From Ranitomeya imitator (Eukaryota): DNA of 64,000 bases. This document shows, piece by piece, positions 1,544 through 63,600 of this stretch (position 1 is its first letter; each line of letters begins with the position of its first letter). The stretch is taken from contig NC_091286.1 of NCBI RefSeq assembly GCF_032444005.1, forward strand, positions 487,630,001 through 487,694,000, given 5' to 3'. The position numbers and the translations under genes are program-made. The notes under the pieces are model-generated. The model was not told the DNA's origin. It was given only the letters and a program-made list of their open reading frames with translations, and did not search any database.

Positions 1544-2448
1544 TGTTAGGGTTGGCGGAACGCACCAAATATATAATTTATTAAATAGAATTGGTGCGTT
1601 CGCAACCCGGGATCCACCGTGCAGGAAAGCACCTGCTGCTAAATAATGGCGGCTCTATATGGCGGTATATACCAACCCTGTTAGCTTCACAGAGTAACCG
1701 CGAGAGGAAAGCTCTGTGCCCTGTTAGACTTTCACAGAGGCACAGGCCAACTACCCAGATGTGAGCAGTGAGTGGTCATGCATGCATACAAAACTCCTCG
1801 CCGGAAATGCCAGCATTCTAGGGGCTTATTTCAGCCGGGTCCCTGAACACACTTAAACACAATCTCCTCGCCGGAGGTGCCAGCATTCTAGGGGCTTATT
1901 TCAGCCGGGTCCCTGAACACATTCAAACACATGACCACATTGGCGCAAAGCATATAGCATAAGACGATACTAGCGCATGGCCGTGCGGTCATGCGCAGTT
2001 TATATAGTTGCAGCACAGGAAGCTGCTACTGAAGTTTTTGCCCTCTCAGGACCTTCCAGAAGGACCAATGGAAAGTGCTGCAGTACCTGAGCATGTTTTG
2101 CCCTTTCAGGACCTTCCAGAAGGACCAATGGAATGTACTGCAGCACCTGAGCATGTGACCGAACATGTGGCCCTCGACCTCCAATGGGAGACCCTGCCCT
2201 GGGCATGCTCAGTGTGAGTAAACAAGGACTTAGTCCCAGAGAGGCTCGCTCGCCGCAGATCAGTGCAGGGTACCATAGGAAAGCCAGAAAAGGCAGTAGT
2301 GACCCTATGCACCGAATCAGCGCCAGCGAGACGCTGGGAGCGACGTCGCCGCTGAGCAGAGCCCACTGCGGCCGATACCGAATGGGAGACCGCAGCAGAC
2401 ACGGATCGAGATTCCCCCTGTGCAGCAGAGGAAACTCGACTCCTAACA
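1544..2448 (-). repeat. 3' LTR of element 1
   Basis: Direct repeat of 6614-7518 with about 13 substitutions by manual count. TATATAAA on the minus strand at 2006-1999. Confidence 0.95.
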
Positions 2449-2451
2449 TTA

Positions 2452-2463
2452 CCCCCCCCTCCT
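2452..2463 (-). promoter_or_regulatory. Polypurine tract (plus-strand primer)
   Basis: Minus strand AGGAGGGGGGGG lies 3 nt from the TG of the 3' LTR. Confidence 0.85.
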
Positions 2464-5400
2464 AGGGCCCCCCCCCTCCTTGAGCCTCACTACGCTCAAA
2501 AGCTGCGATAAGCAGCGGAGCCCGAATGTGCTCCACAGGCTCCCAGGTTCTATCCTCTGGGCCGTGACCCTTCCAGTCCACCAGATAAAATTTCTTGCCA
2601 CGTACCACCTTGCACCCCACAATAGCATTCACCTCAAACTCATCCGTGGATGAACCCGATGTCTCAGCAGATGACTCAGAAAACCGGGACAAATGAACGG
2701 GCTTTAAGAGGGAAACGTGGAAAGTATCGGTGATACCAAGGCGTGGAGGAATAGCCAAACGGTAGACCACAGGGTTGACCTGTTCCAGAACCTTAAACGG
2801 GCCAATGTAGTGAGGAGCAAACTTAGTGGACTCAACTCGCAGCCTGATGTTACGGGCGGAGAGACACACTAAGTCGCCAGGAGCAAAGACCGGAGCGGGG
2901 CGCCGGTGTGTATCAGCCGAAACCCTCATTCTCTCCTTGGAGGCCCGGATGGCATCCTGTGTGCGGTCCCAGATGTCACGTGCCTCCACCGCCCAGTCTG
3001 CCACCCTAGAATCGGTGGATGACACGGGCATGGGCACAGGGACACGCGGATGCTGGCCGTAATTAAGGAGAAAAGGAGTTTGACCAGTGGAATCGGCTAC
3101 GGCGTTGTTCAGGGCAAATTCCGCCCAAGGTAGCAAAGATGCCCAGTCATCCTGCCTAGCAGAGACGAAATGTCGCAAATATGTCACCAGAGTCTGGTTG
3201 GTTCTCTCCACCAACCCATTCGTCTCGGGATGGTATGTAGAGGAGAGGTTTAACTCTATGCTGAGTAAACGGCAGAGCTCTCTCCAAAACCGAGATGCGA
3301 ACTGGGGACCCCGATTGCTGACAATCTTATCAGGCATACCATGCAAACGGAAAACGTGTTTAATGAACAACACCGCCAAGGCCCGTGCTGAGGGTAACCG
3401 AGGAAGCGGCACCAAATGCACCATCTTGGAGAAATGGTCGGTGACAACCCAAATAATGGAGCAGCCACGCGACTTGGGTAGACCCACCACAAAGTCCATC
3501 CCGACCATCTCCCAGGGCCTGTCTGCCACCGGTAGAGGGTAAAGCAACCCAGCAGGCCGTTGCCGAGGAGACCGATTCTGGGCGCAAGAAACGCACTCCT
3601 GAATATAGTCCTTGACATCTCGGGCCATATGCGGCCACCAGTATGTTCTCGCCAGAAGCTCAGATGTCCTCTTGGTCCCAAAATGCCCACCCACTCTGGA
3701 GGAGTGAGCCCAAGAGAGAACCTCCGGTCGCAAGTTAGCTGGTACGAAAGTCTTGCCCGGGGGCACAGACTCTAGTGAAACCGGAGCTACAGTTCTCAGG
3801 CTCTCAGAAGGGACAATAAGCCGAGGCTCCTCCTCCTCCGATGACACCACGGAGCGGGAGAGAGTGTCGGCACGAACGTTCTTCTCCCCGGAGAGGAAAT
3901 GGAGTGTAAAATGGAACCGGGAGAAGAACAGGGACCATCTAGCCTGGCGAGAATTCAGCCGCTGGGCCGTTTGCAGATACACCAAGTTCTTGTGGTCTGT
4001 GAAGACTTGGAAGGGAAAGCGAGCTCCCTCCAAGAGATGTCTCCACTCCAAAAAGGCCAACTTCATGGCCAGCAACTCCCTGTCCCCGATGGAATAATTC
4101 CTCTCCGCTGGTGTGAAGGTCTTGGAGAAGAAGAAGAAGCAAGGATGCTTCCGACCTTGAGCATCCTTTTGGAAAAGGACTGCTCCAGCATCAACGGATG
4201 AGGCATCCACCTCCAAGATAAATGGCTTATCAACATCGGGGCGATGTAGGATGGGAGCGCTAGCGAAGTGTGACTTGATCGAGAGAAAGACTTTGGAGAC
4301 CTCCTCTGACCACAACTTGGGATTTGCTCCCTTCTTGGTGAGGGCAACCAAGGGAGCTACCAAAGTTGAGAAGTGTGGAATGAACTGGCGATAGTAATTA
4401 ATGAACCCCATAAAGCGCTGCACCGCTTTAAGAGAATGGGGTTCCTGCCAGTCCATTACAGCCTGTAGCTTGGCAGGATCCATAGCCAAACCCTGGGCAG
4501 AGATGATATATCCAAGGAAAGGCAAGGACTCCTGCTCAAACACTCACTTCTCCAACTTGGCGTAGAGGGAGTTTGCCCGTAAGAGGTTGAAGACTTTGCG
4601 AACATCTCTCCGATGGGAGTCAATATCTGGAGAGAAGATGAGAATATCATCCAGATAGACTACGACCGAGGTGGTGAGCATATCCCGGAAGATGTCGTTC
4701 ACAAAGTCTTGGAAAACGGCTGGGGCATTACAGAGCCCGAAGGGCATCACCAGATATTCATAGTGCCCATCCCTGGTGTTAAAAGCCGTCTTCCATTCAT
4801 CCCCCTCACGGATGCGAATCAGGTTGTAAGCACCCCGCAGATCTAACTTTGTAAATACCCTCGCTCCCCGTAGCCTATCAAACAGCTCAGATATCAGGGG
4901 TAGTGGGAACTTGTTCTTAACGGTGATGGCGTTAAGACCCCTGTAGTCTATGCATGGACGTAAGTCTCCAGTCTTCTTCTGTACGAAGAAGAACCCTGCC
5001 CCTGCCGGTGACACTGACTTCCTAATGAATCCTCTTGCCAGATTCTCCTGGATGTACTGGGACATTGCCTCCGTCTCCGGGAGAGATAACGGATAGACTC
5101 GACCCCGGGGAGGCTCAGCACCAGGCAAGAGGTCAATAGGACAGTCATAGGGGCGGTGAGGCGGAAGGGTCTCCGCAGCTCTTTTGGAGAACACGTCTGC
5201 ATAGGGCCAATAGTGCTTGGGGAAAGAGGAAAGATCTGCGGGTACCTGTGTAGTAGCAACCTGAACGCACTCCCTCAGACATCTACCCTCGCAAGATTTA
5301 CTCCAACCCAAAATTCTCCCAGATGACCACTCAATATGAGGAGAATGGTAGCGAAGCCATGGTATCCCCAACAGGACCTCATCAATTCCCTCAGGAATGA

Positions 5401-5782
5401 CTAATAGGGAGATTATCTCCTGATGTGATGGAGACACAGATAGCGTGAAAGGAATGGTTTGGTGGGTAATCTGTGAAGGTAGTGTTGACCCATTTACCAC
5501 TCGAACGGTTACCGGCTTGGCGAGCATCACCAAGGGTATTGCGTGACGCTGGGCAAAAGCGGAAGACATAAAGTTACCCTCTGCCCCAGAATCCACGCAT
5601 AGCTCGACCATAAGAGTGGATGGGCCTATGGTAATTGTCCCCTTGAAGGACAACTTTGAGGCAAACGTCGCCGTGTCTAGTGTACCTCCTCCAACTGCCA
5701 CTAGACGCTGACGTTTCCCCAACCGCTGAGGACCCTTGGAGGTGTCCTGACTGCTGGCAAACATGACGGACCTTAGGTGCAC
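2462..5782 (-). pseudogene. pol: pol (aspartic protease, RT, RNase H, integrase, chromodomain) with a nonsense codon at 4544-4546
   Basis: Motifs: VDSGA (PR), YLDD (RT), EVDAS/TDHKNL (RH), H..H..CxxC and MDF (IN), GPF, and YLVDWKGHGPEDRTWEP (chromodomain). ORFs 4544-5782 and 2462-4543 are in one frame, split by TGA where element 3 has TGT. The integrase reads VSNRG instead of VSDRG. Confidence 0.95.
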
Positions 5783-6584
5783 GGGCAGACTGAGACTTGG
5801 ATCCCGCTCGTGTCACCTCTAAGGCCTCATGTGACTCGGATGCCTGGACTGGAGATTCCAAAGGTTTGGCGAAGGTGGGAGCCAGCCGAAACCTCTGCCT
5901 ACACTGGGCTCGCTCCAACCTCCGCTCGTTAAAACGGAGGTCAATACGAGTAGATACGGCAATGAGCTCCTCCAGTGTGGCGGGAATCTCCCTAGTGGCC
6001 AAAGCGTCCTTCACATGGTCAGCCAGCCCCCTCCAAAATACGGGAATGAGGGTTTTTTCTGGCCATTCCAACTCAGACGCTAATGTCCGGAAGTGAACAG
6101 CAAAATGGCTGACCATGGTTGAACCCTGAGTCAAAGCCAGCAGTTGGAGCGCTGTATCATGGGTGACTTGAGGTCCTAAAAAGACCTGTTTCAGAGTGTC
6201 CAGAAACCTAGGAACACTCTGCACCACATGATCGTTGCGCTCCCACAGCGGTGTAGCCCACTCCAACGCTCTGTCCGACAAGAGGGAGATTATGAATCCC
6301 ACCTTTGCCCGCTCAGTAGGGAAACGTGCAGCCAGGAGCTCGAGGTGTATACCACATTGGCTCACGAAACCACTACAGGACTTACTGTCCCCAGAGTATC
6401 TCTCAGGCAAAGGAAGGTGAGATAGGGTCGGAACAGAGGTGGCAGTGGGTAAAGCTGCTGCAGCCACGCTAGCAGCCTGAACAGCTATTGCGGTAACATC
6501 CACCGCCGAGGTTGCACGCTCAAGAGACGCCAACCGGCCCTCCAGCAGCTGGATGTACCCCTGCAATCGCTGTTCATCCGCCAT
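5574..6584 (-). pseudogene. gag: gag (sushi/PEG10-RTL-like capsid) with broken CCHC knuckle; residues past ~5770 are out of frame
   Basis: LPLPERYSGD..C.GF..QC, LLSDRALEWA and QG..VS.FA..F..LA..L.W are retrotransposon-gag motifs. [12 protein letters not shown] is a degenerate CCHC. Confidence 0.9.
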
Positions 6585-6601
6585 TACTTAGCCAGATCCT
6601 G

Positions 6602-6611
6602 GCGCTAGTAT
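6602..6611 (-). promoter_or_regulatory. Self-priming primer-binding site (ATACTAGCGC)
   Basis: Lies 2 nt inside the 5' LTR and lacks the TGG needed for tRNA-CCA pairing. It is the exact complement of GCGCTAGTAT at 7046-7037. Confidence 0.8.
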
Positions 6612-6613
6612 AC

Positions 6614-7518
6614 TGTTAGGGTTGGCGGAACGCACCAAATATATAATTTATTAAATGGAATTGGTGCGTTCGCAACCCGGGATCCACCGTGCAGGAAAGC
6701 ACCTGCTGCTAAATAATGGCGGCTCTATATGGCGGTATATACCAACCCTGTTAGCTTCACAGAGTAACCGCGAGAGGAAAGCTCTGTGCCCTGTTAGACT
6801 TTCACAGAGGCACAGGCCAACTACCCAGATGTGAGCAGTGAGTGGTCATGCATGCATACAAAACTCCTCGCCGGAGATGCCAGCATTCTAGGGGCTTATT
6901 TCAGCCGGGTCCCTGAATACACTTAAACACAATCTCCTCGCCGGAGGTGCCAGCATTCTAGGGGCTTATTTCAGCCGGTTCCCTGAACACATTCAAACAC
7001 ATGACCACATTGGCGCAAAGCATATAGCATAAGACGATACTAGCGCATGGCTGTGCCGTCATGCGCAGTTTATATAGTTGCAGCACAGGAAGCTGCTACT
7101 GAAGTTTTTGCCCTCTCAGGACCTTCCAGAAGGACCAATGGAAAGTGCTGCAGTACCTGAGCATGTTTTGCCCTTTCAGGACCTTCCAGAAGGACCAATG
7201 GAATGTACTGCAGCACCTGAGCATGTGACCGAACATGTGGCCCTCGACCTCCAATGGGAGACCCTGCCCTGGGCATGCTCAGTGTGAGTAAACAAGGACT
7301 TAGTCCCAGAGAGGCTCGCTCGACGCAGATCAGTGCAGGGTACCATAGGAAAGCCAGAAAAGGCAGTAGTGACCCTATGCACCGAATCAGCCCCAGTGAG
7401 ACGCTGGGAGCGACGTCTCCACTGAGCAGAGCCCACTGCGGCCGATACCGAATGGGAGGCTGCAGCAGACACGGATCGAGATTCCCCCTGTGCAGCAGAG
7501 GAAACTCGACTCCTAACA
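6614..7518 (-). repeat. 5' LTR of element 1
   Basis: TG..CA ends. TATATAAA at 7076-7069; predicted TSS at 7046. Confidence 0.95.
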
Positions 7519-8020: not shown

Positions 8021-8981
8021 TGTTAGGGACTGGCGGAACGCACCAAGTACAAGATGAAATGGAACTAGGTGCGTTCGCAGTCCGAGGTCCACCGTGCAGG
8101 AAAAACCCTGCTGCTAGTAAGACGGACTATATGGCGGTACTACAAGTATACACGCACGGGTTAACTACACCCTGCGTGAAGGAAGCGATCCTGTTGCGTC
8201 ACAGGACCGCGGTACCGCACATAGAGCGCGAGCAAGGAGTCAGCGAACTCAAGCCCAACTAGGATTGAAGTTCGATTAGACACTTGCTGGCACAACACCG
8301 CAACTGGGTGTGTAAGGAAACTAAAAAATAATATTAAGGCACAAGAGTGCATGTGGTGCCGCACAGACGAACGCCACTAACCACCCAGGCTTGGGTCAGG
8401 AAAGCGCCGTACAGGCGGACACAGCAACTGGTAGCTGTAATGTGTGTTACGTGCTGTTGGATAAGTCGGGCGCTAGATAGCAAACATACACCTTCCGCGA
8501 ACAGACATTCAATAGGGAGGGTTATTTAAAGAGCGACTTTCACTTACAACACACACACATATTTACAAGACAATACTAGCGCATGGCCGTGCGGTCATGC
8601 GCAGCTTATATAGCTGCAGCACAGGAAACAGCTACAGAAGTTTTGCCCTTTCAGGACCTGCCAAAAGGACCAATGGGATGTGCTGCAGAACCTCAGCATG
8701 TGACCCTCGATCTCCAACAGGAGATCTTGCCCTGGGCATGCTCAGTGTGTGCAAATAAGGACTTAGATCCAGAAACGTCCACTCGCCGCTGCCCAGCACT
8801 GGCTTTAATGGCAGAAGCAGGAAAAGCAGCAGTAACTCTTCGCACAGAGTCAGACTCAGCGAGACGCTGGGATCGACATCCCTGCTGAGCAGACTCCACT
8901 GCGGCTGGAGGAGAATGGGAAACCGCAGCGGAGACGGATCGAGATTCCCCCTGTGCAGCAGAGGAAACTCGACTCCTAACA
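8021..8981 (-). mobile_element. Solo LTR, same family
   Basis: TGTTAGG..CCTAACA termini with TSD CACGC (8016-8020, 8982-8986). TATA and GCGCTAGTATT motif conserved. Confidence 0.93.
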
Positions 8982-10165: not shown

Positions 10166-11122
10166 TGTTAGGTGTCGAGTTCCCACCTCTGCACAGGGAG
10201 AATCTCGAACCATCTCTGCTGCGGTCTCCCATTCTTCTCCAGCCGCAGTGGAGTCTGCTCAGCGGAGACGTTGTTCCCAGCGTCTTGCTCAGTCTCACTC
10301 TGTGCATAGGATTACCGCTGCCTTTCCTGCTTCTGCCATTGAAGCCATTGCTGGGCAGCGGCGAGCAGATGCTTTTGGGACCTAAGTCCTGCTTTTTCCC
10401 TTCTGAGCATGTCCAGGGTGAGATCTCCCATTGGAGATTGAAGGTCACATGCTCAGATGCTGCAGCAATTCCCATTGGTCTTTATTGGAAGGTCCTGAAC
10501 GTGCTGCAGCTATATAAGCTGCGCATGACCGCAAGGCCATGCGCTAATGTACATTTGTAAATGTGTGTGTGCTGTGAGTGAAAGCCGTTCATTAAAATCC
10601 CCTCCCTATTGGATGACTGTTCGCGGAAGGTGGGTGATTGCTATCTAGCGCCCGACTTAGCTACCAGCACGTTACACACCATACAGCGTCTAATCGCTGT
10701 CACCGCCAGTGCGGCGCCATGTGCTTTCACAGCGCTTTCCTGACCCAAGCCTGGGTGGTTAGTGGCGTCCGCCAGTGCGACACCGCATGCACTCTCATGC
10801 ATCTGTTATTATTACCTTGGCTACGCTGACACCCCCTTAGCGGTGTCGAGCGCAAGTAGTCTAGTCGGACTCGGATCCCAAGTCTTGGGACTGAGCTTGG
10901 TGACTCCTTGCTTGCGCTCTTGTGTGTGGTACCACGGCCCTGTGACTTAACAGGGTTCGCTTCCTTCTCACAGGGTGAAGTTAACCCATGTGTGCATTCA
11001 CATTGTACCGCCATATAGTCCATCATTACTTGGCAGCAGGTTCCATCTCTGCACGGTGGACCCCGGGCTACGAATGCACCTTAATCTATCTTATTATTTG
11101 GTGCGTTCCGCTAGCCCTAACA
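10166..11122 (+). mobile_element. Solo LTR inserted in a PLE ORF
   Basis: TG..CA termini with TSD ACATC (10161-10165, 11123-11127). Removing it restores the in-frame PLE peptide DSKVRC|ILDFHSRSDEV. Confidence 0.93.
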
Positions 11123-18099: not shown

Positions 18100-19480
18100 C
18101 AGAGAGTAGGCCCAAATCAGTAATTAGTCTAAATGCCGTTCGAAATTGGCAACAGTAGTAAACAGGCGGCACAGCTTTGTTCAGTGGAGGAGAACAGCAA
18201 GGAGCGGCAGACACCAATAGTAGGCCCCAACCCAACTAGTAGGCCAAATGCAGTCTAACATTAACAACTACTTAACGAGAGCCTGAAAATGGAATTTCAG
18301 GACAGGAAACCAGGAGAACAGCAAGGAGCGGCAGACACTGTTAGTAGGCCCCAACCCAACTAGTAGGCCAAATGCAGTTGTTCCATTTAACAACTATTTA
18401 TCAAGAGCCTGAAGATAGAAGCTCAGGAAAGGCAACCTGGAGAACACCTTGGAGCGGAAGACACCGTCTCTACAACCCAGACCCAACTTGTAGGCCGAAT
18501 GCAGTGTTGTTTTCAACAACTACTTAAGAAGAGCCTCAAGATTGAAGCAATGGAGAGGCAACCTGGAGAACACCTTGGAGCGGAAGACACCGTCTCTACA
18601 CCCCTGACCCAACTTGTAGGCCGCATGCAGTGTTGTTTTCAACAACTACTAAACGAGAGCCAGAAGATTGAAGCAATGGAGAGGCAACCTGGAGAGCACC
18701 TTGGAGCGGCAGACACTGGTAGTAGGCCCCAACCCAAGTACTAGCCCCACTGCAGTTAGATTTACAAAAAAATACTAAACGAGAGCCTGAAGATCAAAGC
18801 TCAGAAAAGGCAACCCGGAGAACACCTTGGAGCGGCAGACACTGGTAGTAGGCCCCAACCCAAGTACTAGCCCCACTGCAGTTAGATTTAAAAAAACTAC
18901 TAAACGAGAGCCTGAAGATCAAAGCTCAGAAAAGGCAACCCGGAGAACACCTGGGGGCGGCAGACACTGGTAGTAGGCCCCAAACCCAAGTACTAGCCCC
19001 ACTGCAGTTAGATTTAAAAAAAACTACTAACTGAGAGCCTGAAGATCAAAGCTCAGAAAAGGCAACCCGGAGAACACCTTGGAGCGGCAGACACTGGTAG
19101 TAGGCCCCAACCCAAGTACTAGCCCCACTGCAGTTAGATTTAAAAAAACTACTAAACGAGAGCCTGAAGATCAAAGCTCAGAAAAGGCAACCCGGAGAAC
19201 ACCTTGGAGCGGCAGACACTGGTAGTAGGCCCCAACCCAAGTACTAGCCCCACTGCAGTTAGATTTAAAAAAACTACTAAACGAGAGCCTGAAGATCAAA
19301 GCTCAGAAAAGGCAACCCGGAGAACACCTTGGAGCGGCAGACACTGGTAGTAGGCCCCAACCCAAGTACTAGCCCCACTGCAGTTAGATTTAAAAAAAAC
19401 TACTAAACGAGAGCCTGAAGATCAAAGCTCAGAAAAGGCAACCCGGAGAACACCTTGGAGCGGCAGACACTGGTAGTAGG
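18100..19480. repeat. Tandem array, ~123-bp unit (6-7 near-identical copies plus diverged copies)
   Basis: Unit CACCTTGGAGCGGCAGACACTGGTAGTAGGCCCCAACCCAAGTACTAGCC... is repeated. Confidence 0.9.
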
Positions 19481-25249: not shown

Positions 25250-26920
25250 ACACACGCAGGACTGTCACTCAAGCACAAATGTCAATATTAATCTCCCACT
25301 GTTTGTTTTTATTTTTTCAGGGAGAATTTAGAAACCCCCCCAAAAAAATAATTTTTTTAAGGAAGAATTTAGAAAACAAATTAAAAAAAGTGATTTTTTC
25401 AGAGAGAATTTAGAAACGAAAAAAAAAAAAAAAAAAAAATAGGCTGTTAGGAGTCAAGTTTCCTCTGCTGCACAGGGAGAATCTCGATCCGTCTCCGCTG
25501 CGGTCTCCCATTCTCCTCCAGCCGCAGTGGAGTCTGCTCAGCAGGGACGTCGATCCCAGCGTCTCGCTCAGTCTGACTCTGTGCGAAGAGTTGCTGCTGC
25601 TTCTCCAGTCTCTGCCAATAAAGTCAGTGCTGGTCAGCAGCGAGCAGACTTCTCTGGGACTAAGTCCTTGTCTGCACGTACTGAGCATGCCCAGGGTAAG
25701 ATCTCCCGTTGGAGATCGAGGGTCATGTGCTCAGGCTCTGCAGCACATTCCATAGGTCCTCTTGGCAGGTCTTGGAAGGGCAAAAGTGCTGTAGCCACTT
25801 CCTGTGCTGCAACTATATAAACTGCGCATGACCGCACGGCCATGCGCTAGTATTGTCTCATAATGTTATATGTGTGTGTGTGTAGATGAATGTATGTCGA
25901 TGGATGAAAGCTCCTAAATATCCCTCCCTAGAGTTGTTGTCTGCTCGCGGATGTTGGTAGCTATCTAGCGCCCGACTAATCATCTGCACGATACACACAT
26001 TACAGCGTCCTCTTGCTGTGTCCGCCTGTACGGCGCCGTGCGCTTGCCTTGCGCTTTCCATACCCAAGCCAGTGTGGTTGGTGGCGTCCGTCAGTGCGGC
26101 ATTGCTCGCACTCCTGTGCATTTATATTTAGTTTCCTTACACACCCAGTTGTGGTGTAGTGCCAGCGAGGGTCTAATTGGACTTCAATCCCAGTTGGGGT
26201 TAAGTACGCTGACTACTCGCTCGCGCTTTAGGTGCGGTACTGCGATCCTGTGACGCAACAGGATTGCTCCCTTCACGCTGGGTGAGGTTGAACCCACGTG
26301 TATATACTTTTGTGTACCGCCATATAGTCTGTATTTACTAGCAGCAGGTTTTCACCTGCACGGTGGACCCCGGACTGCGAACGCATCTATATCACCTTTC
26401 TTGGTGCGTTCCACCAGTCCTAACATAGGCTTTCTATGGCCCACTATCTGAGAGAGAGAGATGGCACACCCAGGAGTCAGGACTGGCACACAAGCAGAAT
26501 GGCCAATATTAATCTCCCACTGTTTTTATTTATTTTTTCAAGGAGAATTTAGAAACCCCCCCCAAAAAAATTATTTTTTAAGGAAGAATTTAGAAAACAA
26601 ATTTAAAAAAGTGATTTTTTCCAGAGAGAATTTAGAAACCAAATAAAAAACAAAAAACAAATAGGCTTTCTATGGCCCACTATCTGAGAGAGAGAGATGG
26701 CACACCCAGGAGTCAGGACTGGCACACAAGCAGAAAGGCCAATATTAATCTCCCACTGTTTTTTTTTAATTTTTTCAGGGAGAATTTAGAAACCCAATAA
26801 AAAAAAAAATAGGCTTTCTATGGCCCACTATTTGACAGAGAGATGGCACGCTCAGGACTGGCACACAAGCCCAAAGGGCAATATTAATCTCCCACTGTTT
26901 TTTTTTCAGGGAGAATTTAT
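25250..26920. repeat. hAT-internal tandem repeat (~120-165 bp), interrupted by a solo LTR
   Basis: Unit AATAGGCTTTCTATGGCCCACTAT..ATATTAATCTCCCACTG. Confidence 0.85.
25445..26425 (+). mobile_element. Solo LTR nested in the hAT
   Basis: TG..CA termini with TSD TAGGC (25440-25444, 26426-26430). TATATAAA at 25814 and GCGCTAGTATT at 25844. Confidence 0.93.
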
Positions 26921-48569: not shown

Positions 48570-50652
48570 TATCTCCCTTTGTGATTGCAAGATCTTATTT
48601 TTAGTATGTAGTCAGTGTTTTTAGTCTGTTTCTAAAGTTATCTCAATCACTAAATCATTTATGGTCATTTCTGTCCAGCATTGGTTTATGGTTTTCTTTG
48701 CATGGTATTTCCTGCCCTTGTCTCTAGTTATTTATTTATTTGTTCAGCGAGTTGGGCCCAGATCTTATCAGATACTTCCCTATTTATTCAGATCTGGCTT
48801 TGTGAAAGCAATTCTTAGGGCTAGCGGAACACACCATGCAATAGAGAGATTGGTACGAGGTGTGTTCGCAGCCTGGGGTCCACCGTGCAGAGATACCTGC
48901 TGTAAAGTAATGGCAGATGGACACTGAGTTCACACGTGGGTTAAAGTTCACCCAGTGTGAAATGTAAGTGACCTCTGTTGCCTCACAGAGTCACGCTGTA
49001 CACAGAAACTAATATCCTAACTAGGGTTGTGCCTCCTCTGGAACTCTTCTGTGCTAACCGCACACATGAATGAACCAGATGCTAAGCCTAGGCTAATTGC
49101 CCCCACTGACATTAGCTGCCTGCCTGAGTGTACAGCCCCAAAGCTAAACAGACTCACACCACATATATACGGAGTGGTAGAGTATCCACTGGCAACAGCC
49201 AAACACAAATGATACTAGCGCATGGCCATGTGGCCATGCAAACCTTTTTTAGTTGTAGCTCTCCAGGACTTTCTAGAGGACCAATAGGAGCTGCTACAAG
49301 ATCTGAGAGTGTGACCCCCGACCTCCAATGAGAGGTCTTCCCTTGGGCATGCTCAGAAGGAGAAAAGCAGGAATTAGTCTCAGGAGCGCCTGCTTGCCGC
49401 CGGACAGTGCTGGTTATAATTGCTGAACCTGGAAGGGCGACAGTAACCAAACATGCAGTATCTGTCCATAGCAGGCACCAGGCACTGGGACCGACATCTC
49501 TGCCAAGCAGGCTCCACTGCGGCTGGAGAAGAGTGGGAGACTGCAGTGGACATGTTTCGAAATTCTCCCTGTGCAGCGGCAGGAACTCAAAACCTAACAT
49601 GGGCCCCCCTCCTTGGGCCTTGCTACATTCAAAGGCTGCAATGAACAGCAGAGCCCGAATGTGCTCCACAGGTTTCCAGGTTCTGTCCTCTGGGCCGTGA
49701 CCCTTCCTGTCCACCAGATAGTATTTTTTGCTATGTACCACCTTGCACCCCAAGATAGAGCTCACCGCGTACTCATCCGTGGACGAACCCGATGTCCCAG
49801 CAGATGACTCGGAAAAGCGGGACATATAGACGGGCTTTAAGAAAAAGTGTCGGTGATACCTAGGCGCGGAGGAATGGCGAAACGGTAGACCACAGGGTTA
49901 ACCTGTTCCAGAACCTTGAAAGGGCCTATGTAGAAGGCACAAACTTAGTGGACTCAACTCGCAGCTTGATGTTATGGGCGGAGAGCCACACCAAGTCACC
50001 AGGAGCAAAAGTCAGAGCGGGGCGCCGGTGAGCATCGGCAGAAACTCTTATTCTCTCCTTGAAGGCCCAGATGGCATCCTGTGTGCGGTCCTAAATGTCA
50101 CGTGCCTCCACCGCCCAGTCTGCCACCCTAAAAGGTGGGTGACACGGGCATGGGCACAGGAACACGTGGATGCTGGCTGTAATTAAGGAGAAAAGGAGTC
50201 TGCTCAGTGGAGTTCGCTATGGCGTTGTTCAAAGCAAATTCTGCCAAGGTGCAGATGCCCAGTCATCCTGCCTAGCAGAGACAATATGTCGCAGGTACAG
50301 TATGTGATCAGAGTCCGGTTGGCCCTCTACAAAACCCATTCATCTTGGGATGGTACGCAGAAGAGAGATTTAGCTCAATGCTGAGTAAACGACAGAACTC
50401 CCTCCAAAACCAAGACGCAAACTGGGGACCCCGGTCACTGACAATTTTGTCAGGCATGCCATGTATATGGAAAACATGTTTAATGAACAACGCCGCCAAG
50501 GCCCGTGCAGAAGGTAACCGTGGAAGCGGCACCAAGTGCACCATTTTAGAAAAATGGTCGGTGACTACACAGATAACGGTGCAGCTACAAGATTTGGGTA
50601 AGCCCATCACGAAGTCCATCCCCACCATCTTCCAGGGCTAGGGGGTAAAGTA

Positions 50653-50995
50653 TAAAGTAAATAAATAGATATGAAGCGAAGCCTCAGCCAGCTCACCGAT
50701 TCGCTTCACAGGTGCACGGAACCCGTCCTGACCCAATGTGTCTTCAATCCAATATGTGAACAAAGTTAGTAGTTCCAGCTCCTTTTAAAATTTCCAATTC
50801 TTTATTTTTCCATTAAAACTGCAAAGTCCTTGCAGTTTCACAGCTGTGAAAAAGATCATATTAGATCAAAACTGTTGCTTGTTTTTCTGTATCCACTGTA
50901 ACTACATCCACTTTGCACAAGGACTTTGCAGTTTTAATGGAAAAATAAAGAATTGGAAATTTTAAAAGGAGCTGGAACTACTAACTTTGTTCACC
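50653..50995. mobile_element. 343-bp hairpin-containing insertion, probably PLE-tail derived
   Basis: 13-bp direct repeat AGGGGGTAAAGTA (50640-50652, 50996-51008). 77-bp inverted repeat at 50756-50832 / 50918-50994. Confidence 0.7.
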
Positions 50996-52874
50996 AGGGG
51001 GTAAAGTAGCCCAGCAAGCCGTTGCCAAGGATACCGATTCTTGGCACAGGAGACGCATGCCTGAATAAAGTCTCTAACGTCACGTGCCATATGCGGCCAC
51101 CAGTACGTCCTCGCCGGAAGCTCAAATGTCCTTTTGATTCCAAAATATCCACCCACCCTGGATGAGTGAGCCCAAGAGAGAACCTCCGGTCGCAAATTGG
51201 ATGGACAGACTCTAGCGACAACGGAGCCACAGTTCTCAGGATCTCAGAGGGAACAATTAGCCGAGGCTCCTCTGATGATGATGATGATACCACGGAGCGG
51301 GAGAGAGCATCGGCGTGAATGTTCTTCTCCCCAGATAGGAAATGAAGGGTGAAGTGGAACCAGGAGAAGAACAGGGACCATCTGGGCTGGCGAGAATTCA
51401 GCCGCTGAGCTGTCTGCAAACATACAAAATTCTTGTTGTCAGTGTAGACTTGGAAGGGAAAGCGAGCCCCTTCCAGAAGGTGTCTCCATTCTGAAAAAGC
51501 CAACTTCATAGCTAGCAACTCCCTTTCTCCAATGGAGTAATTCCTCTCCACGGGTGTAAAGGTCTTGGAGAAAAAGAAGCAAGCATGCTTCCGACCTTCA
51601 GCATCCTTTTGGAAGAGGACTGCTCCTGCACCGACAGATGAGGCATCCACCTAAATCTTAAATGGCTTATCAACATCGGGGTGATGTAGAATGGGAGCGC
51701 TAGCAAAATGGTACTTAATAGAGAGAAAGGCCTTGGAGACCTCCTCTGACCACAATTTGGGATCTGCTCCCTTCTTGGTGAGGGCAACCAGGGGAGCTAC
51801 CAAAGTTGAGAATTGAGGAATGAACTGGCGATAATAGTTGATGAACCCAATAAAGCGCTGCACTGCCCTTGAGAGAATGGGGTTCCTGCCAGTCCATCAC
51901 AGCCTGTAGCTTGGCAGGATCCATAGCCAATCCCTGGGTGGAGATGATATAGCCAAGGAAAGGCAAGGACTCCTGCTCAAACACACACTTCTCCAACTTG
52001 GCATAGAGGGAGTTTGCTCGTAGGAGGCCCAAAACTTTGCAAACATCTCTTCAGTGGGAGTCTATATCTGGACAGTAGATGAGAATATCATCCAGATAGA
52101 CTGCAACCGAGGTGGAGAGCATATCCCGGTAGATATCGTTCACAAAGTCTTGGAAAACGGCTGGGGCATTACAGAGCCCGAAGGGCATCACCAGGTATTC
52201 ATAGTGCACATCTCTGGTGTTAAAAGCCGTCTTCCATTCATCCCCCTCACGGATGTGAATCAGGTTGTAAGCACCCCACAGATCTAGTTTAGTAAATACC
52301 CTTGCTCCCCGAAGCCTATCAAAGAGCTCAGATATCAGTTGCAGAGGGTACTTGTTCTTAACGGTGATGGCATTAAGACCCCTGTAATCTATGCATGGAC
52401 ATAATTCTCCATTCTTCTTCTGCACAAAGGAGAACCTAGCCCCTGCAGATGACACTGACTTCCTAATGAATGCTCTTGACAGATTCTCCTGGATGTACTG
52501 AGACATTGCCTCCATCTCCGGGAGAGATAACAGGTAGACTCGACACCGGCAAGGCTCACCACCAGGCAAGAGGTCAATAGACAGTCATAGGGGTGGTGAG
52601 GCGGAAGGGTCTCCACAGGCCTTTTGGAGAACACCTCCGCATACGGACAATATTGCTTGGGGAGAATGGAAAGATCTGCGGGTACCTCAGTAATAGCAAC
52701 CTGAAAGCACTCCCTCTGACATCTACCCTAACAAGATTCACTCCATCCCAATATTCTGCCTGTGGACCACTCTATATGAGGGGAGTGGTACCGTAGCCAA
52801 GGTATCCCTAACAGGACCTCATCAATTCCCTTAGGAATGACGAGAAAAGAAATAATCTCCTAATGAGATGGTGA

Positions 52875-53202
52875 CAGGGCCGGACTGGCCATTTGGCAAT
52901 TCTAGCAAATGCCAGAGGGGCCGGTCTGGTTGTGAGCTGCCTTGTGTGCTACTTTGTTAACAGAATCAATGTTCTCAAGACACCCATACTGTTAAGAGTT
53001 GTGACGGAGCACAAAGCCGGTCACTCCGTCACTTACCTCAGCATGCCGTGGGTATAGAAAGATTGGTCTTGTAGTAATTCTTCCTTTCTTCCATCAAGGA
53101 CAATATTAGTAATATATCTCATCTAGTTATTGGGGATGGGGACACCATGGGCCTGTGTGATTTCAAATGCCAGGGCTGAATTTCATCCCCAGTCCGTACC
53201 TG
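52875..53202. mobile_element. hAT-type MITE inserted in the protease region of element 2
   Basis: TIRs CAGGGCCGGACTGG / CCAGTCCGTACCTG (12/14 match). 8-bp TSD GATGGTGA/GATTGTGA (7/8 match). Confidence 0.8.
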
Positions 53203-54759
53203 GATTGTGACATAGATAGAGTAAATGGGATGGTCTGGTGTGTTATCTGTGAGGGCAGTGTCGACCCATTCACCACTCGTACGGTCACTGGTTTGGCGAG
53301 CATCATCAGGGGTATTGTGTGTTATTGAGCGAAGGCAGATTACATAAAATTGCCCTCCGACCCAGAATCCATGCAAAGCTCTACTGAATGAGCCGATGAA
53401 CCTATGGTAATTGTCCCCTTAAATGACAGTTTGGAGGAAAATGTTGTCATGTCTAGTGTACTTCCTTCTACAACCACTTGACGCTGACGTTTTCCCGACC
53501 GCTGGGAACATCTGGAGACAAGATGTTCTGACTGCCAGCAGACATGACAGACCTTGAGTGCACGAGCAGTCTTGGACTTAGATCCCGCTTGTGACACCTC
53601 CATGGCCTCATGTGACTCGGGCGCCTGGACCGGAGTTCCCAAAGGTTGTGAGAAGGTGGGAGCCAGCCGAAACCTCTGCCTACACTTCGTTAAAACGAAG
53701 ATCTATGCGAGTAGATATAGCTATTAGCTCCTCCAGTATGGCGGGAATCTCCCTAGCGGCCAAAGCGTCCTTCACATGGTTAGCCAGCCCCCTCCAAAAA
53801 CAGGGATGAGGGCTTTATCCAACCACTCCAGCTCAGATGCTAAAGTCTGGAAGTGAACGACAAAATGGCTGACCATGCACGAGCCCTGAGTCAATGCCAA
53901 CAGTTGGAGTGCGGTATCACAGGTGACTCGAGGTCCTAAAAAGACCTGTTTCAGAGTGCTCAAAAACAACAGAGCATTCTGCACCACATGATCGCAACAC
54001 TCAAACAGCGGTTTAGCCCACTCCAACACCCTGTCCGACAGGAGAGATATAATGAATCCCACCTTTGCTCGCTCTGTGGGAAAACGTGCAGCCAGGAGCT
54101 CGAGGTGTATTGCGCACTGGCTCACGAAACCCCTACAAGATGTATCTTGCAGCGGGAGGCGAGATAAGGTCAGAACAGGGGTGGCAGTGGATAATCTTGC
54201 TGCAGCCACGCTGGCAGCCTGAACAGCTATGGCGGATACATCCACAGCTGAGGTTGTGCGCTCGAGAGCCGCCAATCTGCCCTCGAGCTGCTGGATGTAC
54301 AGCAGCAGTTGCTGTTTGTCCGCCATTACTAACCAGACCCTGGTGCTAGTATACTGTTAGGGCTGGCGGAACGCACCAAGTAATAGAGAGATTGATACGA
54401 GGTGCGTTCTCAGCCCGGGGTCCACCGTGCAGAGATACCTACTGCAAAGTAATGGCGGATGGACACTGAGCTCACAGGTGGGTTAAGCTTCACCCCGTGT
54501 GAAATATAAGTGACCTCTGTTGCCTCACAGAGTCACGCTGAACACAGAAACTGATACCCTAACTATGGTTGTACTTGCTCTGGAACTCTTCTGCGCTAAC
54601 CGCACACATGAAGGAACCAGATGCTAAGCCAAGGCTAATTGCCCCCACTGACGCCAGCTGCCTGCCTGAGTGTACAGCCCCAAAGCTAAACAGACTCACA
54701 CCACATATATTCAGAGTGAGAACCAGAAACACATGGGCTACTTGCACATTGAACAAGTC

Positions 54760-59696: not shown

Positions 59697-60666
59697 TGTT
59701 AGGGGTCGAGTTCCCGCTTCTGCACAGGGGGAATCTCGAGCCATCTCCGCTGCGGTCTCCCATTCTTGTCCAGCCGCAGTGGAGTCTGCTCAGCAAAGAC
59801 GTCGGTCCCAGCGTCTTGCTCATTCTCACTCTGTTCTGAGAGTTACTGCTGTTTCTCCAGTCTCTGCCATTAAAGCCAGTACTGGTCAGCAGCGAGCGGA
59901 CTTCTCTGGGACTAAGTCCTTGTCTGCGCATACTGAGCATGCCCAGGGTAAGATCTCCCATTGGAGATCGAGGGTCATGTGCTCAGGCTCTGCGGCACAT
60001 TCCATTGGTCCTCTTGACAGGTCTTGGAAGGGCAAAAGTCCTGTTGCCACTTCCTGTGCTGCAACTATATAAACTGCGCATGACCGCACGGCCATGCGCT
60101 AGTATTGTCTTGTTAATATGTGTGTGTGTGTTGTGAGTGAAAGTCGCTCTTTAAAATACCCTCCCTATTGAATGTCTGTTCGCGGAAGGTGTATGTTTGC
60201 TATCTAGCGCCCGACTTGTCCAACAGCACGAAACACACATTGCAGCGTCCTCTTGCGGTGTCCGCCTGTACGGCGCCGTGCGCTTGCCTTGCGCTTTCCA
60301 TACCCAAGCCAGTGTGGTTGGTGGCGTCCGTCAGTGCGGCATTGCTCGCACTCCTGTGCATTTATATATTTATTCTTAGTTTCCTTACACACCCAGTTGT
60401 GGTGTAGTGCCAGCGAGGGTCTAATCGGACTTCAATCCCAGTTGGGGTTAAGTACGCTGACTGCTCGCTCGCGCTTTAGGTGCGGTGCCGCGATCCTGTG
60501 ACGCAGCAGGATTGCTCCCTTCACGCTGGGTGAGGTTGAACCCACGTGTATATACTATAGTGTACCGCCATATAGTCTGCTATTTACTAGCAGCAGGGTT
60601 TCTCCTGCACGGTGGACCCCGGACTGCGAACGCATCTTTCTTGGTGCGTTCCGCCAGTCCTAACAG

Positions 60667-60677
60667 AATACTAGCGC
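60667..60677 (+). promoter_or_regulatory. Self-priming PBS (AATACTAGCGC)
   Basis: Perfect 11-nt complement of GCGCTAGTATT (60096-60106), which begins 30 nt after TATATAAA (60066). Confidence 0.85.
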
Positions 60678-60694
60678 CAGGGTCTGGCTAGTAA

Positions 60695-63600
60695 ATGGCG
60701 GACGACCAGCGTTTACAGAGGTACATCCAGCAGCTGGAGGGAAGGTTGGCAGCTCTTGAGCGTACAACCTCAGCTGTGGATGTCACTGCTGTAGCTGTTC
60801 AGGCTGCTAGTGTAGCCGCAGCCAGTTTGTCCGCTGCCACCCCTGCTCCGACTTTATCCCGTCTCCCGCTTCCTGACAAGTTTGCTGGCGACAGTAAACA
60901 ATGTCGCGGATTCGTGAGCCAGTGCTCCATACATCTTGAGCTCCTGGCGTCACGCTTCCCTACGGAACGGGCGAGAGTGGGATTTATTCTATCTCTCTTG
61001 TCGGGCAGGGCGTTGGAGTGGGCAACGCCACTTTGGGAGCGAGATGATCGTGTGGTACAGAGTGCTCCTCTCTTCTTGGACACTCTGAAGCAGGTCTTTT
61101 TAGGACCTCGTGTTACCCACGATACCGCGCTCCAGTTGTTGACTATTATTCAGGGCACGTCCGTGGTCAGCCAGTTTGCCATCCAGTTCCGGACTCTAGC
61201 TTCTGAGTTAGAGTGGCCAGACAAAGTTCTTATTCCGGTGTTCTGGAGGGGACTGGCAGACCATGTGAAGGACGCCTTGGCCACTAGGGAGATACCCGCC
61301 ACACTGGAGGAACTTATCTCAGTATCTACCCGCATCGACCTCCGTTTTCACGAGCGGAGGTTGGAGCGGACCCAGTGTAGGCAGAGGTTTCGGCTGGCTC
61401 CTACCTTCGCCAGACCTCTTGAATCTCCTGTCTTGGCGTCAGACATCTGTCATCAACTTGGACATTACGCCAATAAATGTCCGCGGCGGTCGGGAAGACG
61501 ATCGCGTCTAGTAACCATTGGGGGAGGTTCACTAGACACAGCAGCATTTTCCTCCAAACTGTCCTTTAAAGGGACAATCCTGTTAGGCTCCTCCACTCTA
61601 ACAGTCGAGCTTTGTGTGGATTCAGGAGCAGAGGGAAACTTCATGTCCTCTGCTTTTGCTCTACGCCATGCTATACCACTAGTCACGCTCGCCAAACCAG
61701 TTACAGTTAGAGTTGTGAATGGGGCGACACTTCCACTGCAGATCACACACCAGACAGTTCCGTTCACGCTGTCCATGTCCCCTTCCCACCAGGAGATTAT
61801 TTCCCTTCTTGTTCTTCCCGAGGGAATGGATGAGATTTTGCTGGGAATACCCTGGCTCCGTTTCCACTCTCCACATATTGAGTGGTCCTCAGGGAGAATA
61901 TTGGGTTGGAGTAAGTCTTGTATGGGCAGGTGTGTGAGTGAGTGTCTACAGGTTTCTACTACTGAGGTACCCGCAGACCTTTCATCTCTTCCTAGGTGCT
62001 ATTGGTGCTATGCAGATGTATTCTCTAAGAAGGCTGCTGAGACCCTACCGCCTCATCGCCCCTACGACTGTCCTATAGACCTCTTGCCTGGAGCCGAACC
62101 TCCTCGGGGAAGAGTATATCCCCTCTCCCTCCCAGAGACGGAGGCTATGTCTCAATACATTCAGGAGAATTTGGCAAGAGGGTTTATAAGGAAGTCGGTG
62201 TCTCCGGCAGGGGCGGGATTCTTCTTCGTACAGAAGAAGAACGGGGAGTTACGTCCTTGCATCGATTACAGGGGTCTCAATGCTATCACCATTAAAAATA
62301 AATACCCGTTGCCCCTGATATCGGAGCTCTTTGACAGGCTAAGGGGAGCTAAGATATTCACCAAATTAGATCTGCGGGGTGCCTATAATCTGATTCGTAT
62401 CCGTGAGGGGGACGAATGGAAAACGGCTTTCAATACCAGGGATGGGCACTATGAGTACCTGGTGATGCCCTTCGGGCTCTGTAATGCCCCAGCCGTTTTT
62501 CAGGACTTTGTCAACGATATCTTCCGGGATATGCTTTCCACCTCGGTTGTAGTCTATCTGGATGATATTCTCATCTTCTCTCCAGATATTGACTCCCACC
62601 GGAGAGATGTTGGCAGAGTCTTCGAACTCCTACGGGCGAATTCCTTATATGCAAAGTTGGAGAAGTGTGTGTTTGAGCAGGAGTCCTTACCTTTCCTGGG
62701 CTATATCATCTCGGCCCAGGGATTGGCTATGGATCCTGCCAAACTACAGGCAGTGATGGACTGGCAGGAACCCCATTCTCTTAAAGCGGTGCAGCGCTTT
62801 ATGGGGTTCATAAATTACTATCGCCAGTTCATCCCCCACTTCTCAACTTTGGTAGCTCCCTTGGTATCCCTCACCAAGAAGGGAGCAAATCCCAAATTGT
62901 GGTCCGAAGGGGTCTCCAAGGCCTTCGCTTCTATAAAGTCCCATTTTGCTAGCGCTCCCATCTTACATCGTCCCGATGTAGATAAGCCATTCCTTATGGA
63001 GGTGGATGCCTCATCCGTTGGTGCTGGAGCAGTCCTCTATCAAAAGGATGCTCAAGGTCGGAAGCACCCATGCTTCTTCTTCTCAAAGACCTTCACACCA
63101 GCGGAGAGAAATTACTCCATCGGGGATAGGGAGTTGCTGGCAATGAAGTTGGCCTTTTCGGAGTGGAGACACCTCTTGGAGGGTGCTCGGTTCCCATTCC
63201 AAGTCTTCACGGACCACAAGAATTTGGTCTATTTGCAGACAGCCCAGCGGCTGAATTCTCGTCAGGCCAGATGGTCCTTGTTTTTCTCCCGGTTCCACTT
63301 TACTCTACATTATCTCGCCGGAGAGAAGAACATTCGTGCTGACGCTCTCTCTCGCTCCCTTGTGTCAACTGAGGAGGAGGAGGACGAGCCTCGGCTCATT
63401 GTCCCTTCGGAGAGTCTGAGAACCGTAGCTCCGGTTTCGCTTGAGTCTGTGCCTCCGGGCAAGACTTTTGTTCCCATCAATTTGCGACCGGAGGTTCTCT
63501 CCTGGGCTCATTCGTCCAGAGTGGGTGGACACTTTGGGGCAAAGAGGACATCAGAGTTGCTGGCGAGAATGTACTGGTGGCCACATATGGTTCGTGACGT

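What the first reader, a model, noticed from the sequence alone, without database searches (positions are those of the whole stretch)
6602..7076. tRNA-independent, self-primed reverse transcription signature across the whole LTR family
No internal copy has a TGG-type tRNA PBS. In the LTRs checked, GCGCTAGTAT(T) begins exactly 30 nt after TATA (7076/7046, 2006/1976, 8612/8582, 25814/25844, 60066/60096; 10511/10541 has 2 changes), i.e. at the expected TSS. The sequence just inside the 5' LTR is its reverse complement: 10 nt in element 1, 11 nt in element 3, and 9/10 in element 2 via a CpG change. This is the Tf1 mechanism, in which the RNA 5' end folds onto the PBS and RNase H cleavage yields the primer. 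It has been proposed for vertebrate Tf1/sushi elements, so the mechanism itself is not new. Here the motif is held constant while the rest of R/U5 diverges strongly between subfamilies.
Basis: partly seen in the sequence, partly recalled or inferred. Interest (0 to 1): 0.75.

Follow-up and report, generated by a model that had tools for sequence, protein, structure and literature searches.

The report
Self-priming frog Gypsy retrotransposon family
A family of poison-frog jumping genes very probably starts copying itself with the first 10-11 letters of its own RNA instead of a borrowed tRNA; its yeast (Tf1) and fish (sushi) relatives are already known to do this, so the reading is right but ordinary.

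Summary
In all seven LTRs that keep this region, GCGCTAGTAT starts exactly 30 nt after the first T of the TATA box. Its reverse complement lies 1-2 nt after the 5' LTR in all three elements that have an internal part: 10 bp, 11 bp, and 9 of 10 with one CpG change. No TGG-type tRNA site is present.

The elements are chromodomain Ty3/Gypsy retrotransposons. Their proteins are 96-97% identical to Ranitomeya imitator proteins.

Fold z-scores are -7.1 and -6.1, eight pairs changed on both sides, and RNAalifold predicts the same structure independently. Together with the primer-PBS duplex, this matches the three-duplex "pretzel" described for Tf1/sushi self-priming.

Caveats. The transcription start was not measured, because only assembled contigs were available. 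The whole TATA-to-+10 block is conserved, not only the 10-mer. The primer-PBS duplex itself does not vary. One element has lost the U3 and R start of its 5' LTR.

The literature calls self-priming a common feature of the Tf1/sushi group, vertebrates included. This scan also noted the same signature elsewhere in this genome. It is a new member of a known kind, of low interest.

The parts
1544..7518 (-). Element E1: full-length chromovirus, from 3' LTR to 5' LTR, flanked by the 5-bp target duplication ATAAG
   Evidence: The LTR pair is 98.4% identical over 912 nt. LTR ends TGTTAGG..CCCTAACA and the duplication were read. Pfam finds gag, protease, RT, RNase H, integrase, SH3_Tf2-1 and Chromo. There is one in-frame stop in pol at 4544-4546.
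6614..7518 (-). E1 5' LTR (U3-R-U5)
7069..7076 (-). TATA box of the E1 5' LTR (TATATAAA); first T at 7076
7037..7046 (-). Predicted self-primer, the first 10 nt of the E1 RNA (GCGCTAGTAT). G1 at 7046 is 30 nt after the TATA T1 and is preceded by a pyrimidine.
   Evidence: The start site is inferred, not measured.
6602..6611 (-). E1 primer-binding site (ATACTAGCGC), 2 nt after the LTR's terminal CA. It lies in the open 19-nt loop of the U5/leader domain.
6619..6678 (-). U5 stem-loop of E1, ending 5 nt before the LTR end (counterpart of U5-IR). The outer stem covaries between subfamilies.
6708..6722 (-). U5 segment a of E1. It pairs with leader segment a' at 6578-6592.
   Evidence: 15 bp, three pairs changed on both sides
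6578..6592 (-). Leader segment a' of E1. It contains the gag AUG (6584-6582) and pairs with U5 segment a.
6680..6685 (-). Helix b of E1 (GGAUCC), upstream arm. It pairs with 6594-6599 just after the PBS.
   Evidence: U:A in E1 against C:G in E3 and E4
6594..6599 (-). Helix b' of E1 (GGAUCU), directly downstream of the PBS
1967..1976 (-). R-start motif in the E1 3' LTR
59697..64000 (+). Element E4: 5' LTR at 59697-60665, then the internal part running off the end of the window. Coding capacity is degraded.
60096..60106 (+). E4 predicted self-primer, 11 nt (GCGCTAGTATT), 30 nt after the TATA box at 60066
   Evidence: The MFE fold pairs nt 1-11 with the PBS at P of about 0.99.
60667..60677 (+). 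E4 primer-binding site, 11 nt, 1 nt after the LTR end
48813..54718 (-). Element E3: 3' LTR at 48813-49599, internal part, and a 5' LTR remnant at 54355-54718 that lacks U3, TATA and the R start
54343..54352 (-). E3 primer-binding site with one CpG-type change (ATACTAGCAC)
49212..49221 (-). R-start motif in the E3 3' LTR. It is unchanged, although the TATA box and spacer beside it carry 11 changes in 30 nt relative to E1.
8021..8981 (-). Solo LTR with target duplication GCGTG; R-start motif at 8573-8582
10166..11122 (+). Solo LTR with target duplication ACATC; R-start motif at 10541-10550 with 2 changes
25445..26425 (+). Solo LTR with target duplication TAGGC; R-start motif at 25844-25853

Best explanation
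This is a family of Tf1/sushi-type chromoviruses (Ty3/Gypsy) in a Ranitomeya-like poison frog, and it primes minus-strand DNA synthesis with its own RNA.

Proposed steps:
1. Transcription starts at the G that lies 30 nt after the TATA box (inferred).
2. The end of U5 and the gag leader fold into a four-helix domain: a:a', a small hairpin, b:b' and a long U5 stem-loop. This domain holds the PBS single-stranded in a 19-nt loop (shown as a conserved, covarying, unusually stable predicted structure).
3. The first 10-11 nt of the RNA pair with that loop and form a pseudoknot, the 'pretzel' (complementarity shown, pairing inferred).
4. By analogy with Tf1, the element's RNase H cuts after about nt 11, and the freed 3'-OH primes cDNA synthesis into U5 (inferred from the family, not tested here).
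For: - The motif lies at TATA+30 in 7 of 7 LTRs.
- Its complement lies 1-2 nt after the LTR in 3 of 3 elements. The chance of such a match is 0.1-0.6% per element, even before the position is required to fit.
- Complementarity stops exactly at G1 in each element.
- Primer-PBS duplex energies are -16.0 and -17.6 kcal/mol. In the E4 RNA the minimum-energy fold pairs nt 1-11 with the PBS at P of about 0.99.
- The 10-mer is the least diverged segment: 0.07 differences per site, against 0.13-0.20 upstream and 0.5-0.6 downstream. It shows 0 changes in 10 nt in the oldest copy, whose adjoining TATA box and spacer carry 11 in 30.
- For the U5/leader domain, 94.4% of cells are paired. Eight pairs changed on both sides, against 0-2 in slid controls. 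The covariation score is 0.116 against 0.02-0.05.
- RNAalifold predicts the same helices with no guidance from me. Fold z-scores are -7.1 and -6.1.
- Pfam finds Chromo, SH3_Tf2-1, Integrase_H2C2, RT_RNaseH and a DUF4939/Ty3_capsid gag.
- Relatives carry names such as 'Transposon Tf2-9 polyprotein' and 'Gypsy retrotransposon integrase-like protein 1'.
- Literature: self-priming and the three-duplex pretzel are common to the Tf1/sushi group (PMC10085805, PMC6317226, PMC4600332).
Against: - No start site was measured. All runs were assembled contigs, and contigs break at 7065 in DNA runs and in guessed RNA runs alike.
- The primer-PBS duplex is invariant across the three elements, so it has no covariation of its own. 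The only difference is nt 11 (C against T), which changes duplex length rather than compensating.
- The conserved block runs on into the core promoter, so conservation of the 10-mer is partly confounded with it.
- In the E1 RNA, a nested minimum-energy fold puts the 5' end in a local hairpin, and P of PBS pairing is 0.003. Nested folding cannot represent the pseudoknot, so this result is weak either way.
- Helices a:a' and b:b' rest on three sequences only.
- One both-sides change in the inner stem occurs in a dead 3' LTR at CpG sites and is probably decay after insertion.
- The host tRNA set could not be compared.
Confidence: 0.8

Rival explanations
1. A host RNA, not the element's own 5' end, is the primer. 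This could be a tRNA half, an internal tRNA segment or another abundant small RNA that happens to carry the same 10-11 nt.
For: Some LTR elements use half-tRNA primers (PMC6317226). The host tRNA set could not be examined: the window holds no tRNA gene.
Against: There is no TGG at or near the LTR border. The complement sits at exactly TATA+30 of the element's own LTR in every copy, which a host primer would not require. The clade is known for self-priming (PMC10085805).
Confidence: 0.07
2. The pairing between the 5' end and the leader is real but has another purpose, such as packaging, dimerisation or control of gag translation. Priming would then happen some other way.
For: Helix a:a' covers the gag AUG. 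In E1 the 5' end also has an alternative local hairpin, as a regulatory switch would.
Against: No other candidate PBS exists next to the LTR. The layout is the one shown experimentally to prime Tf1 (PMC10085805, citing Lin and Levin 1997 and 1998). A regulatory role could coexist with priming rather than replace it.
Confidence: 0.08
3. The match is a coincidence. The 10-mer is conserved only as part of the core promoter and initiator, and the sequence after the LTR matches it by chance.
For: The whole TATA-to-+10 block is conserved. The three elements are related, so they are not three independent trials.
Against: Such a match arose in 0.1-0.6% of shuffles before its position is considered. 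The match is kept in subfamilies whose R/U5 differ at more than half of sites. The PBS is displayed in a conserved, covarying loop.
Confidence: 0.03

Closest known systems
Tf1 and Tf2 of Schizosaccharomyces pombe (founders of the Tf1/sushi group)
   Same: Chromodomain integrase. No tRNA PBS. The first ~11 nt of the mRNA are complementary to a PBS just after the 5' LTR. Two further duplexes join PBS-adjacent sequence to LTR sequence downstream of the primer (the 'pretzel'; PMC10085805).
   Different: The host is a frog. The LTR is about 905 nt, with 426-559 nt between primer and PBS, so the fold-back spans a much longer R/U5. The gag has a DUF4939/Ty3_capsid signature. The downstream duplex is split into two helices (a:a' and b:b') around a small hairpin and covers the gag AUG. 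There is no experimental evidence here.
sushi-ichi and the vertebrate 'V-clade' chromoviruses (Butler et al. 2001, J Mol Evol 52:260; cited in PMC10085805, PMC6317226, PMC4600332)
   Same: Vertebrate Tf1/sushi-group elements for which self-priming and a pretzel structure were proposed from sequence. Protein relatives of this family are mostly fish and frog chromoviruses at 43-57% identity.
   Different: This is a distinct family with its own primer/PBS sequence. I could not read Butler et al. (not held), so I could not compare helix by helix or check whether frog elements were already included.
Tj1 of Schizosaccharomyces japonicus
   Same: Self-priming was proposed from complementarity between LTR and PBS, and the element is active in a transposition assay (PMC4600332).
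   Different: [quoted passage not shown]
U5-IR stem-loop of retroviruses
   Same: A stem-loop formed by the end of U5 immediately upstream of the PBS. Lin and Levin 1998 (title cited in PMC4600332) liken the Tf1 structure to it.
   Different: Retroviruses pair the PBS with a tRNA, not with their own 5' end.

Membership tests
Tf1/sushi group of chromoviruses (Ty3/Gypsy) | [quoted passage not shown] | tested here: met
   Pfam hits in that order, ending with SH3_Tf2-1 and Chromo (E 1.9e-10) at residues 636-684 of the last pol piece
Tf1/sushi group of chromoviruses (Ty3/Gypsy) | No PBS complementary to a tRNA 3' end (no TGG next to the 5' LTR) | tested here: met
   The sequences after the three 5' LTRs begin GTATAC.., GTATAC.. 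and GAATAC..; the first TGG is 20 nt in, just before the gag ATG
Tf1/sushi group of chromoviruses (Ty3/Gypsy) | PBS complementary to a sequence in the element's own 5' LTR at the expected mRNA start | tested here: met
   10, 11 and 9 of 10 bp, always against the motif at TATA+30
Tf1/sushi group of chromoviruses (Ty3/Gypsy) | The mRNA 5' end really lies at the first base of the self-primer | not testable with these tools
   Only Logan contigs were served, no raw RNA reads. Contig ends are the same in DNA runs and in guessed RNA runs.
Tf1/sushi group of chromoviruses (Ty3/Gypsy) | Three-duplex 'pretzel': the primer-PBS duplex plus two duplexes between PBS-adjacent sequence and LTR sequence downstream of the primer | tested here: met
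   The U5 stem-loop abuts the PBS upstream, and b:b' plus a:a' abut it downstream. 94.4% of cells are paired and 8 pairs changed on both sides. RNAalifold agrees. z-scores are -7.1 and -6.1.
Tf1/sushi group of chromoviruses (Ty3/Gypsy) | RNase H cleavage of the RNA after about nt 11 to release the primer | not testable with these tools
   This is a biochemical step, known only for Tf1 (titles cited in PMC4600332)
Tf1/sushi group of chromoviruses (Ty3/Gypsy) | RT/integrase falls inside the Tf1/sushi clade in a phylogeny | tested here: inconclusive
   No reference sequences (Tf1, sushi-ichi, Ty3, plant chromoviruses) could be brought in, so no tree was built. The only support is the names and domain sets of relatives, e.g. 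'Transposon Tf2-9 polyprotein'.

The most novel reading that the evidence does not exclude
The outermost helix of the PBS-presenting domain (a:a') contains the gag start codon and is kept by three consecutive compensatory changes. In one subfamily the self-primer can also fold into a local 5' hairpin. The RNA may therefore switch between two forms. In the translated form a:a' is open, or the primer is sequestered. In the priming or packaging form the pretzel is closed and the AUG is buried. One structure would then couple Gag synthesis to the start of reverse transcription. As far as I found, no such coupling has been described for Tf1/sushi elements.
Probability: 0.2. Interest if true: 0.45.

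Novelty: new member of a known kind. Interest (0 to 1): 0.25.

Why it matters
Poison-frog genomes are swollen by Gypsy elements: about 1 Gb in Oophaga pumilio, with high expression in ova (PMC6278860). In a DNA run of the host, 18,676 contigs lay on this family's 1.3-kb stretch.

Knowing that the family primes itself has three uses:
- It gives annotators a rule for these genomes: look for the complement of the TATA+30 sequence just after the LTR, not for a tRNA match.
- It gives a predicted U3/R boundary for each LTR.
- It suggests, as my own inference, that host defences aimed at tRNA-type PBS sequences would not touch these elements.

It does not change what is known about the mechanism.

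Tried and rejected
Relatives from Dendrobates, Ranitomeya and Logan contigs could therefore not be fetched to test primer/PBS covariation across families.
- Two metagenome scans, one with the U5-end pattern and one with the R-start pattern, found nothing. A viral-contig scan with the pol piece found nothing.
- Sequencing runs: all 24 were Logan contigs and RNA status was only a guess. Read laying gave no molecule starts. Contigs covering the putative start end at 7065 in DNA and 'RNA?' runs alike, so this is a k-mer branch point, not a start site.
- ARAGORN and Rfam found no tRNA or any other RNA family in the window, so the PBS could not be compared with host tRNAs.
- Global nested folding of the E1 RNA did not pair the 5' end with the PBS. 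I do not count this against the model, because the pretzel is a pseudoknot that nested folding cannot draw.
- Rejected as evidence of selection: the G:C to A:U change in the inner U5 stem of the E3 3' LTR. The sister 5' LTR keeps the original pair and both changes are CpG transitions, so it is probably decay after insertion.
- Rejected as a motif copy: the hit at 56908.
- Lin and Levin 1997/1998 were not held. Butler et al. 2001 I could cite only at second hand. The pretzel description is taken from PMC10085805.
The majority line printed by DNA alignment was not used, and comparisons were made between real copies.

Full report
**What is in the window.** A self-comparison with the LTR of the finding, a reading of the LTR ends and a comparison with the internal part give eight LTR copies of one family.
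- E1 is a full element on the minus strand. Its 3' LTR is at 1544-2448 and its 5' LTR at 6614-7518. The two are 98.4% identical, and the target duplication is ATAAG.
- E3 is on the minus strand. Its 3' LTR is at 48813-49599. Only a remnant of its 5' LTR is left, at 54355-54718.
- E4 is on the plus strand. Its 5' LTR is at 59697-60665, and its internal part runs off the end of the window.
- Three solo LTRs lie at 8021-8981, 10166-11122 and 25445-26425, each with its own 5-bp duplication.

All LTRs begin TGTTAGG and end CCTAACA or a near variant.

The three open pieces of E1 carry these Pfam domains:
- gag: DUF4939, Retrotrans_gag, Ty3_capsid;
- first pol piece: aspartyl protease, RVT_1;
- second pol piece: RT_RNaseH, Integrase_H2C2, rve, SH3_Tf2-1, Chromo.

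So this is a chromodomain Ty3/Gypsy element. The pol piece is 96-97% identical to several Ranitomeya imitator proteins and 43-57% identical to many fish and frog chromoviruses, one of them named 'Transposon Tf2-9 polyprotein'. The host is therefore a Ranitomeya-like poison frog.

- GCGCTAGTAT with at most one mismatch occurs ten times, against 1.26 expected. Nine of the ten hits are at the two predicted places. The tenth, at 56908, has no promoter context.
- In all seven LTRs that keep the region, the first T of the TATA box is exactly 30 nt before the first G of the motif.
- The reverse complement of the motif sits after the LTR's terminal CA in all three elements that have an internal part. 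The duplexes are CA-GT-ATACTAGCGC in E1 (10 bp), CA-G-AATACTAGCGC in E4 (11 bp) and CA-GT-ATACTAGCAC in E3 (9 of 10, one CpG transition).
- Pairing cannot extend upstream of G1 in any element. The base before G1 is U and would face a C. The edge of the complementarity thus coincides with the predicted 5' end of the RNA.
- There is no TGG in the first 19 nt after any 5' LTR.
- In 5000 dinucleotide shuffles of each LTR, a reverse-complement match of 10 nt or more to the 14 nt after the LTR arose in about 0.6% of trials, and 11 nt or more in 0.1%. Requiring the match to sit at TATA+30 lowers this by about two further orders of magnitude (my estimate).

- E3 has lost U3, the TATA box and the R start of its 5' LTR. 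Its 9/10 pairing is therefore inferred from its 3' LTR.
- The statement that the motif is constant while R/U5 diverges is true but incomplete. The whole block from about 12 nt before the TATA box to +10 is conserved.

Comparing real copies pairwise, differences per site are 0.20 for the upstream 12 nt, 0.16 for TATA, 0.13 for the 22-nt spacer and 0.07 for the 10-mer. Downstream they are 0.52 for +11 to +20 and 0.60 for +21 to +40. The 10-mer is the best-kept part. In the oldest copy (E3 3' LTR) it has 0 changes in 10 nt, while the TATA box and spacer next to it have 11 in 30, even though the 10-mer holds two CpGs. The sample is small, however.

PMC10085805 summarises Lin and Levin 1997/98 and Butler et al. 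2001. Tf1 self-priming needs three duplexes:
- the primer-PBS duplex;
- two duplexes that each join a PBS-adjacent sequence to an LTR sequence downstream of the primer (together, the 'pretzel').

I looked for these and found a conserved domain from about 110 nt before the LTR end to the gag start. In E1 it runs from 6722 to 6578 on the minus strand and consists of:
- helix a:a', 15 bp between U5 (6722-6708) and the leader (6592-6578), containing the gag AUG;
- a small hairpin, GCAGG..CCUGC;
- helix b:b', 6-7 bp between GGAUCC (6685-6680) and GGAUCU (6599-6594), directly after the PBS;
- a long U5 stem-loop (6678-6619) that ends 5 nt before the LTR end.

The PBS lies unpaired in the 19-nt loop enclosed by b:b' and the stem-loop.

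The evidence for this domain:
- Counted on the eight-copy alignment A2, 94.4% of cells form pairs. Eight pairs changed on both sides, against 0-2 when the partners are slid by 1-3 columns. The covariation score is 0.116 against 0.02-0.05.
- Three consecutive pairs of a:a' differ compensatorily between E1 and E4. One pair of b:b' is U:A in E1 and C:G in E3 and E4.
- The outer stem of the U5 stem-loop reads GGGUUG/CAACCC, GGACUG/CAGUCC, GGGCUA/UAGCCC or GGGCUG/CAGCCC, depending on the subfamily.
- RNAalifold on the three elements alone, with no structure from me, returns the same helices and the same open PBS loop.
- The domain folds far better than shuffles, with z of -7.1 in E1 and -6.1 in E4.

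Limits of this evidence:
- I derived the structure from E1.
- Helices a:a' and b:b' rest on three related sequences.
- One both-sides change, in the inner stem of the E3 3' LTR, is probably CpG decay after insertion, because the sister LTR lacks it.

**How the primer fits in.** The primer-PBS duplex crosses a:a' and b:b', so the whole structure is a pseudoknot that nested folding cannot show in one piece.
- In E4 the nested minimum-energy fold chooses the primer-PBS duplex, with P of about 0.99.
- In E1 it chooses the U5/leader domain plus a local 5' hairpin, and P of primer-PBS pairing is 0.003.
- Forcing the PBS open gives the same domain in both RNAs. The isolated primer-PBS duplex is worth -16.0 kcal/mol in E1 and -17.6 in E4.

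**What could not be tested.**
- The transcription start is a prediction. It rests on the 30-nt TATA spacing and the pyrimidine-purine step at -1/+1, both taken from established knowledge of metazoan promoters.
- The runs that hold this DNA were all assembled contigs, and their RNA status was only guessed. Contigs across the site end at 7065 in DNA and 'RNA?' runs alike, so they say nothing about the start.
- They do show that the family is hugely repeated: 18,676 contigs of one DNA run were laid on the stretch. Among the best-supported variant positions, none falls in 7034-7099 or 6576-6738, while 7010-7033 has many. Only part of that table was shown.
- Host tRNAs could not be compared, because the window has no tRNA gene.

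**Comparison with what is known.**
[quoted passage not shown] The family here meets every sequence-level criterion I could test. The criteria not tested are the mapped start site, RNase H cleavage and a formal phylogeny.

This scan has also noted the same signature in several other Gypsy families of this genome. One follow-up there reached the same verdict. I did not check those notes.

**Verdict.**
It is strengthened by the covarying PBS-presenting domain.
- The mechanism is already known for this clade, so this is a new member of a known kind and of low interest (0.25).
- The one thread that might be new is that the outer helix of the domain buries the gag start codon. This could couple translation to priming, but it is speculative.

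Noticed in passing
window 4544-5782 and 5574-6584 (minus strand): In E1 the pol frame lies +1 relative to gag, with a 209-nt overlap. Tf1/sushi elements outside fission yeast are said to use mostly -1 frameshifting (PMC10085805). E1 also has an in-frame stop at 4544-4546, and the place where a gag CCHC knuckle is expected no longer fits the pattern. This may simply be damage in a dead copy.
   Followed up: partly
window 7106-7226 and 6858-7001: The E1 LTR carries two internal tandem duplications that the other subfamilies lack. One is a ~60-nt unit in U3 containing a CCATTGG (inverted CCAAT-like) motif. The other is a ~70-nt unit in R/U5.
   Followed up: no
window 7013-7046 (minus strand): In the E1 subfamily only, the first 34 nt of the predicted RNA can fold into a local hairpin that sequesters the self-primer. 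It is the minimum-energy state in nested folding.
   Followed up: partly
window 6640-6660 (minus strand): In E1 an AATAAA lies in the loop of the U5 stem-loop, about 40 nt before the LTR end. The other subfamilies have different, shorter loops without it.
   Followed up: no
window 54719-59696: The E3 5' LTR is cut off at 54718. The sequence upstream is unrelated, and the missing U3/R is nowhere else in the window.
   Followed up: partly
window 8021-8981, 10166-11122, 25445-26425: There are three solo LTRs of the family, each with its own 5-bp target duplication, against three elements with internal parts. LTR-LTR recombination has therefore removed about half of the insertions seen here.
   Followed up: no
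window 18224-21119, 28014-31102, 31718-32842: Three satellite arrays with units of about 120-126, 390 and 135 nt. They lie inside the stretch that another note of this scan (s1-295393) reads as a 16.4-kb hAT with cargo.
   Followed up: no
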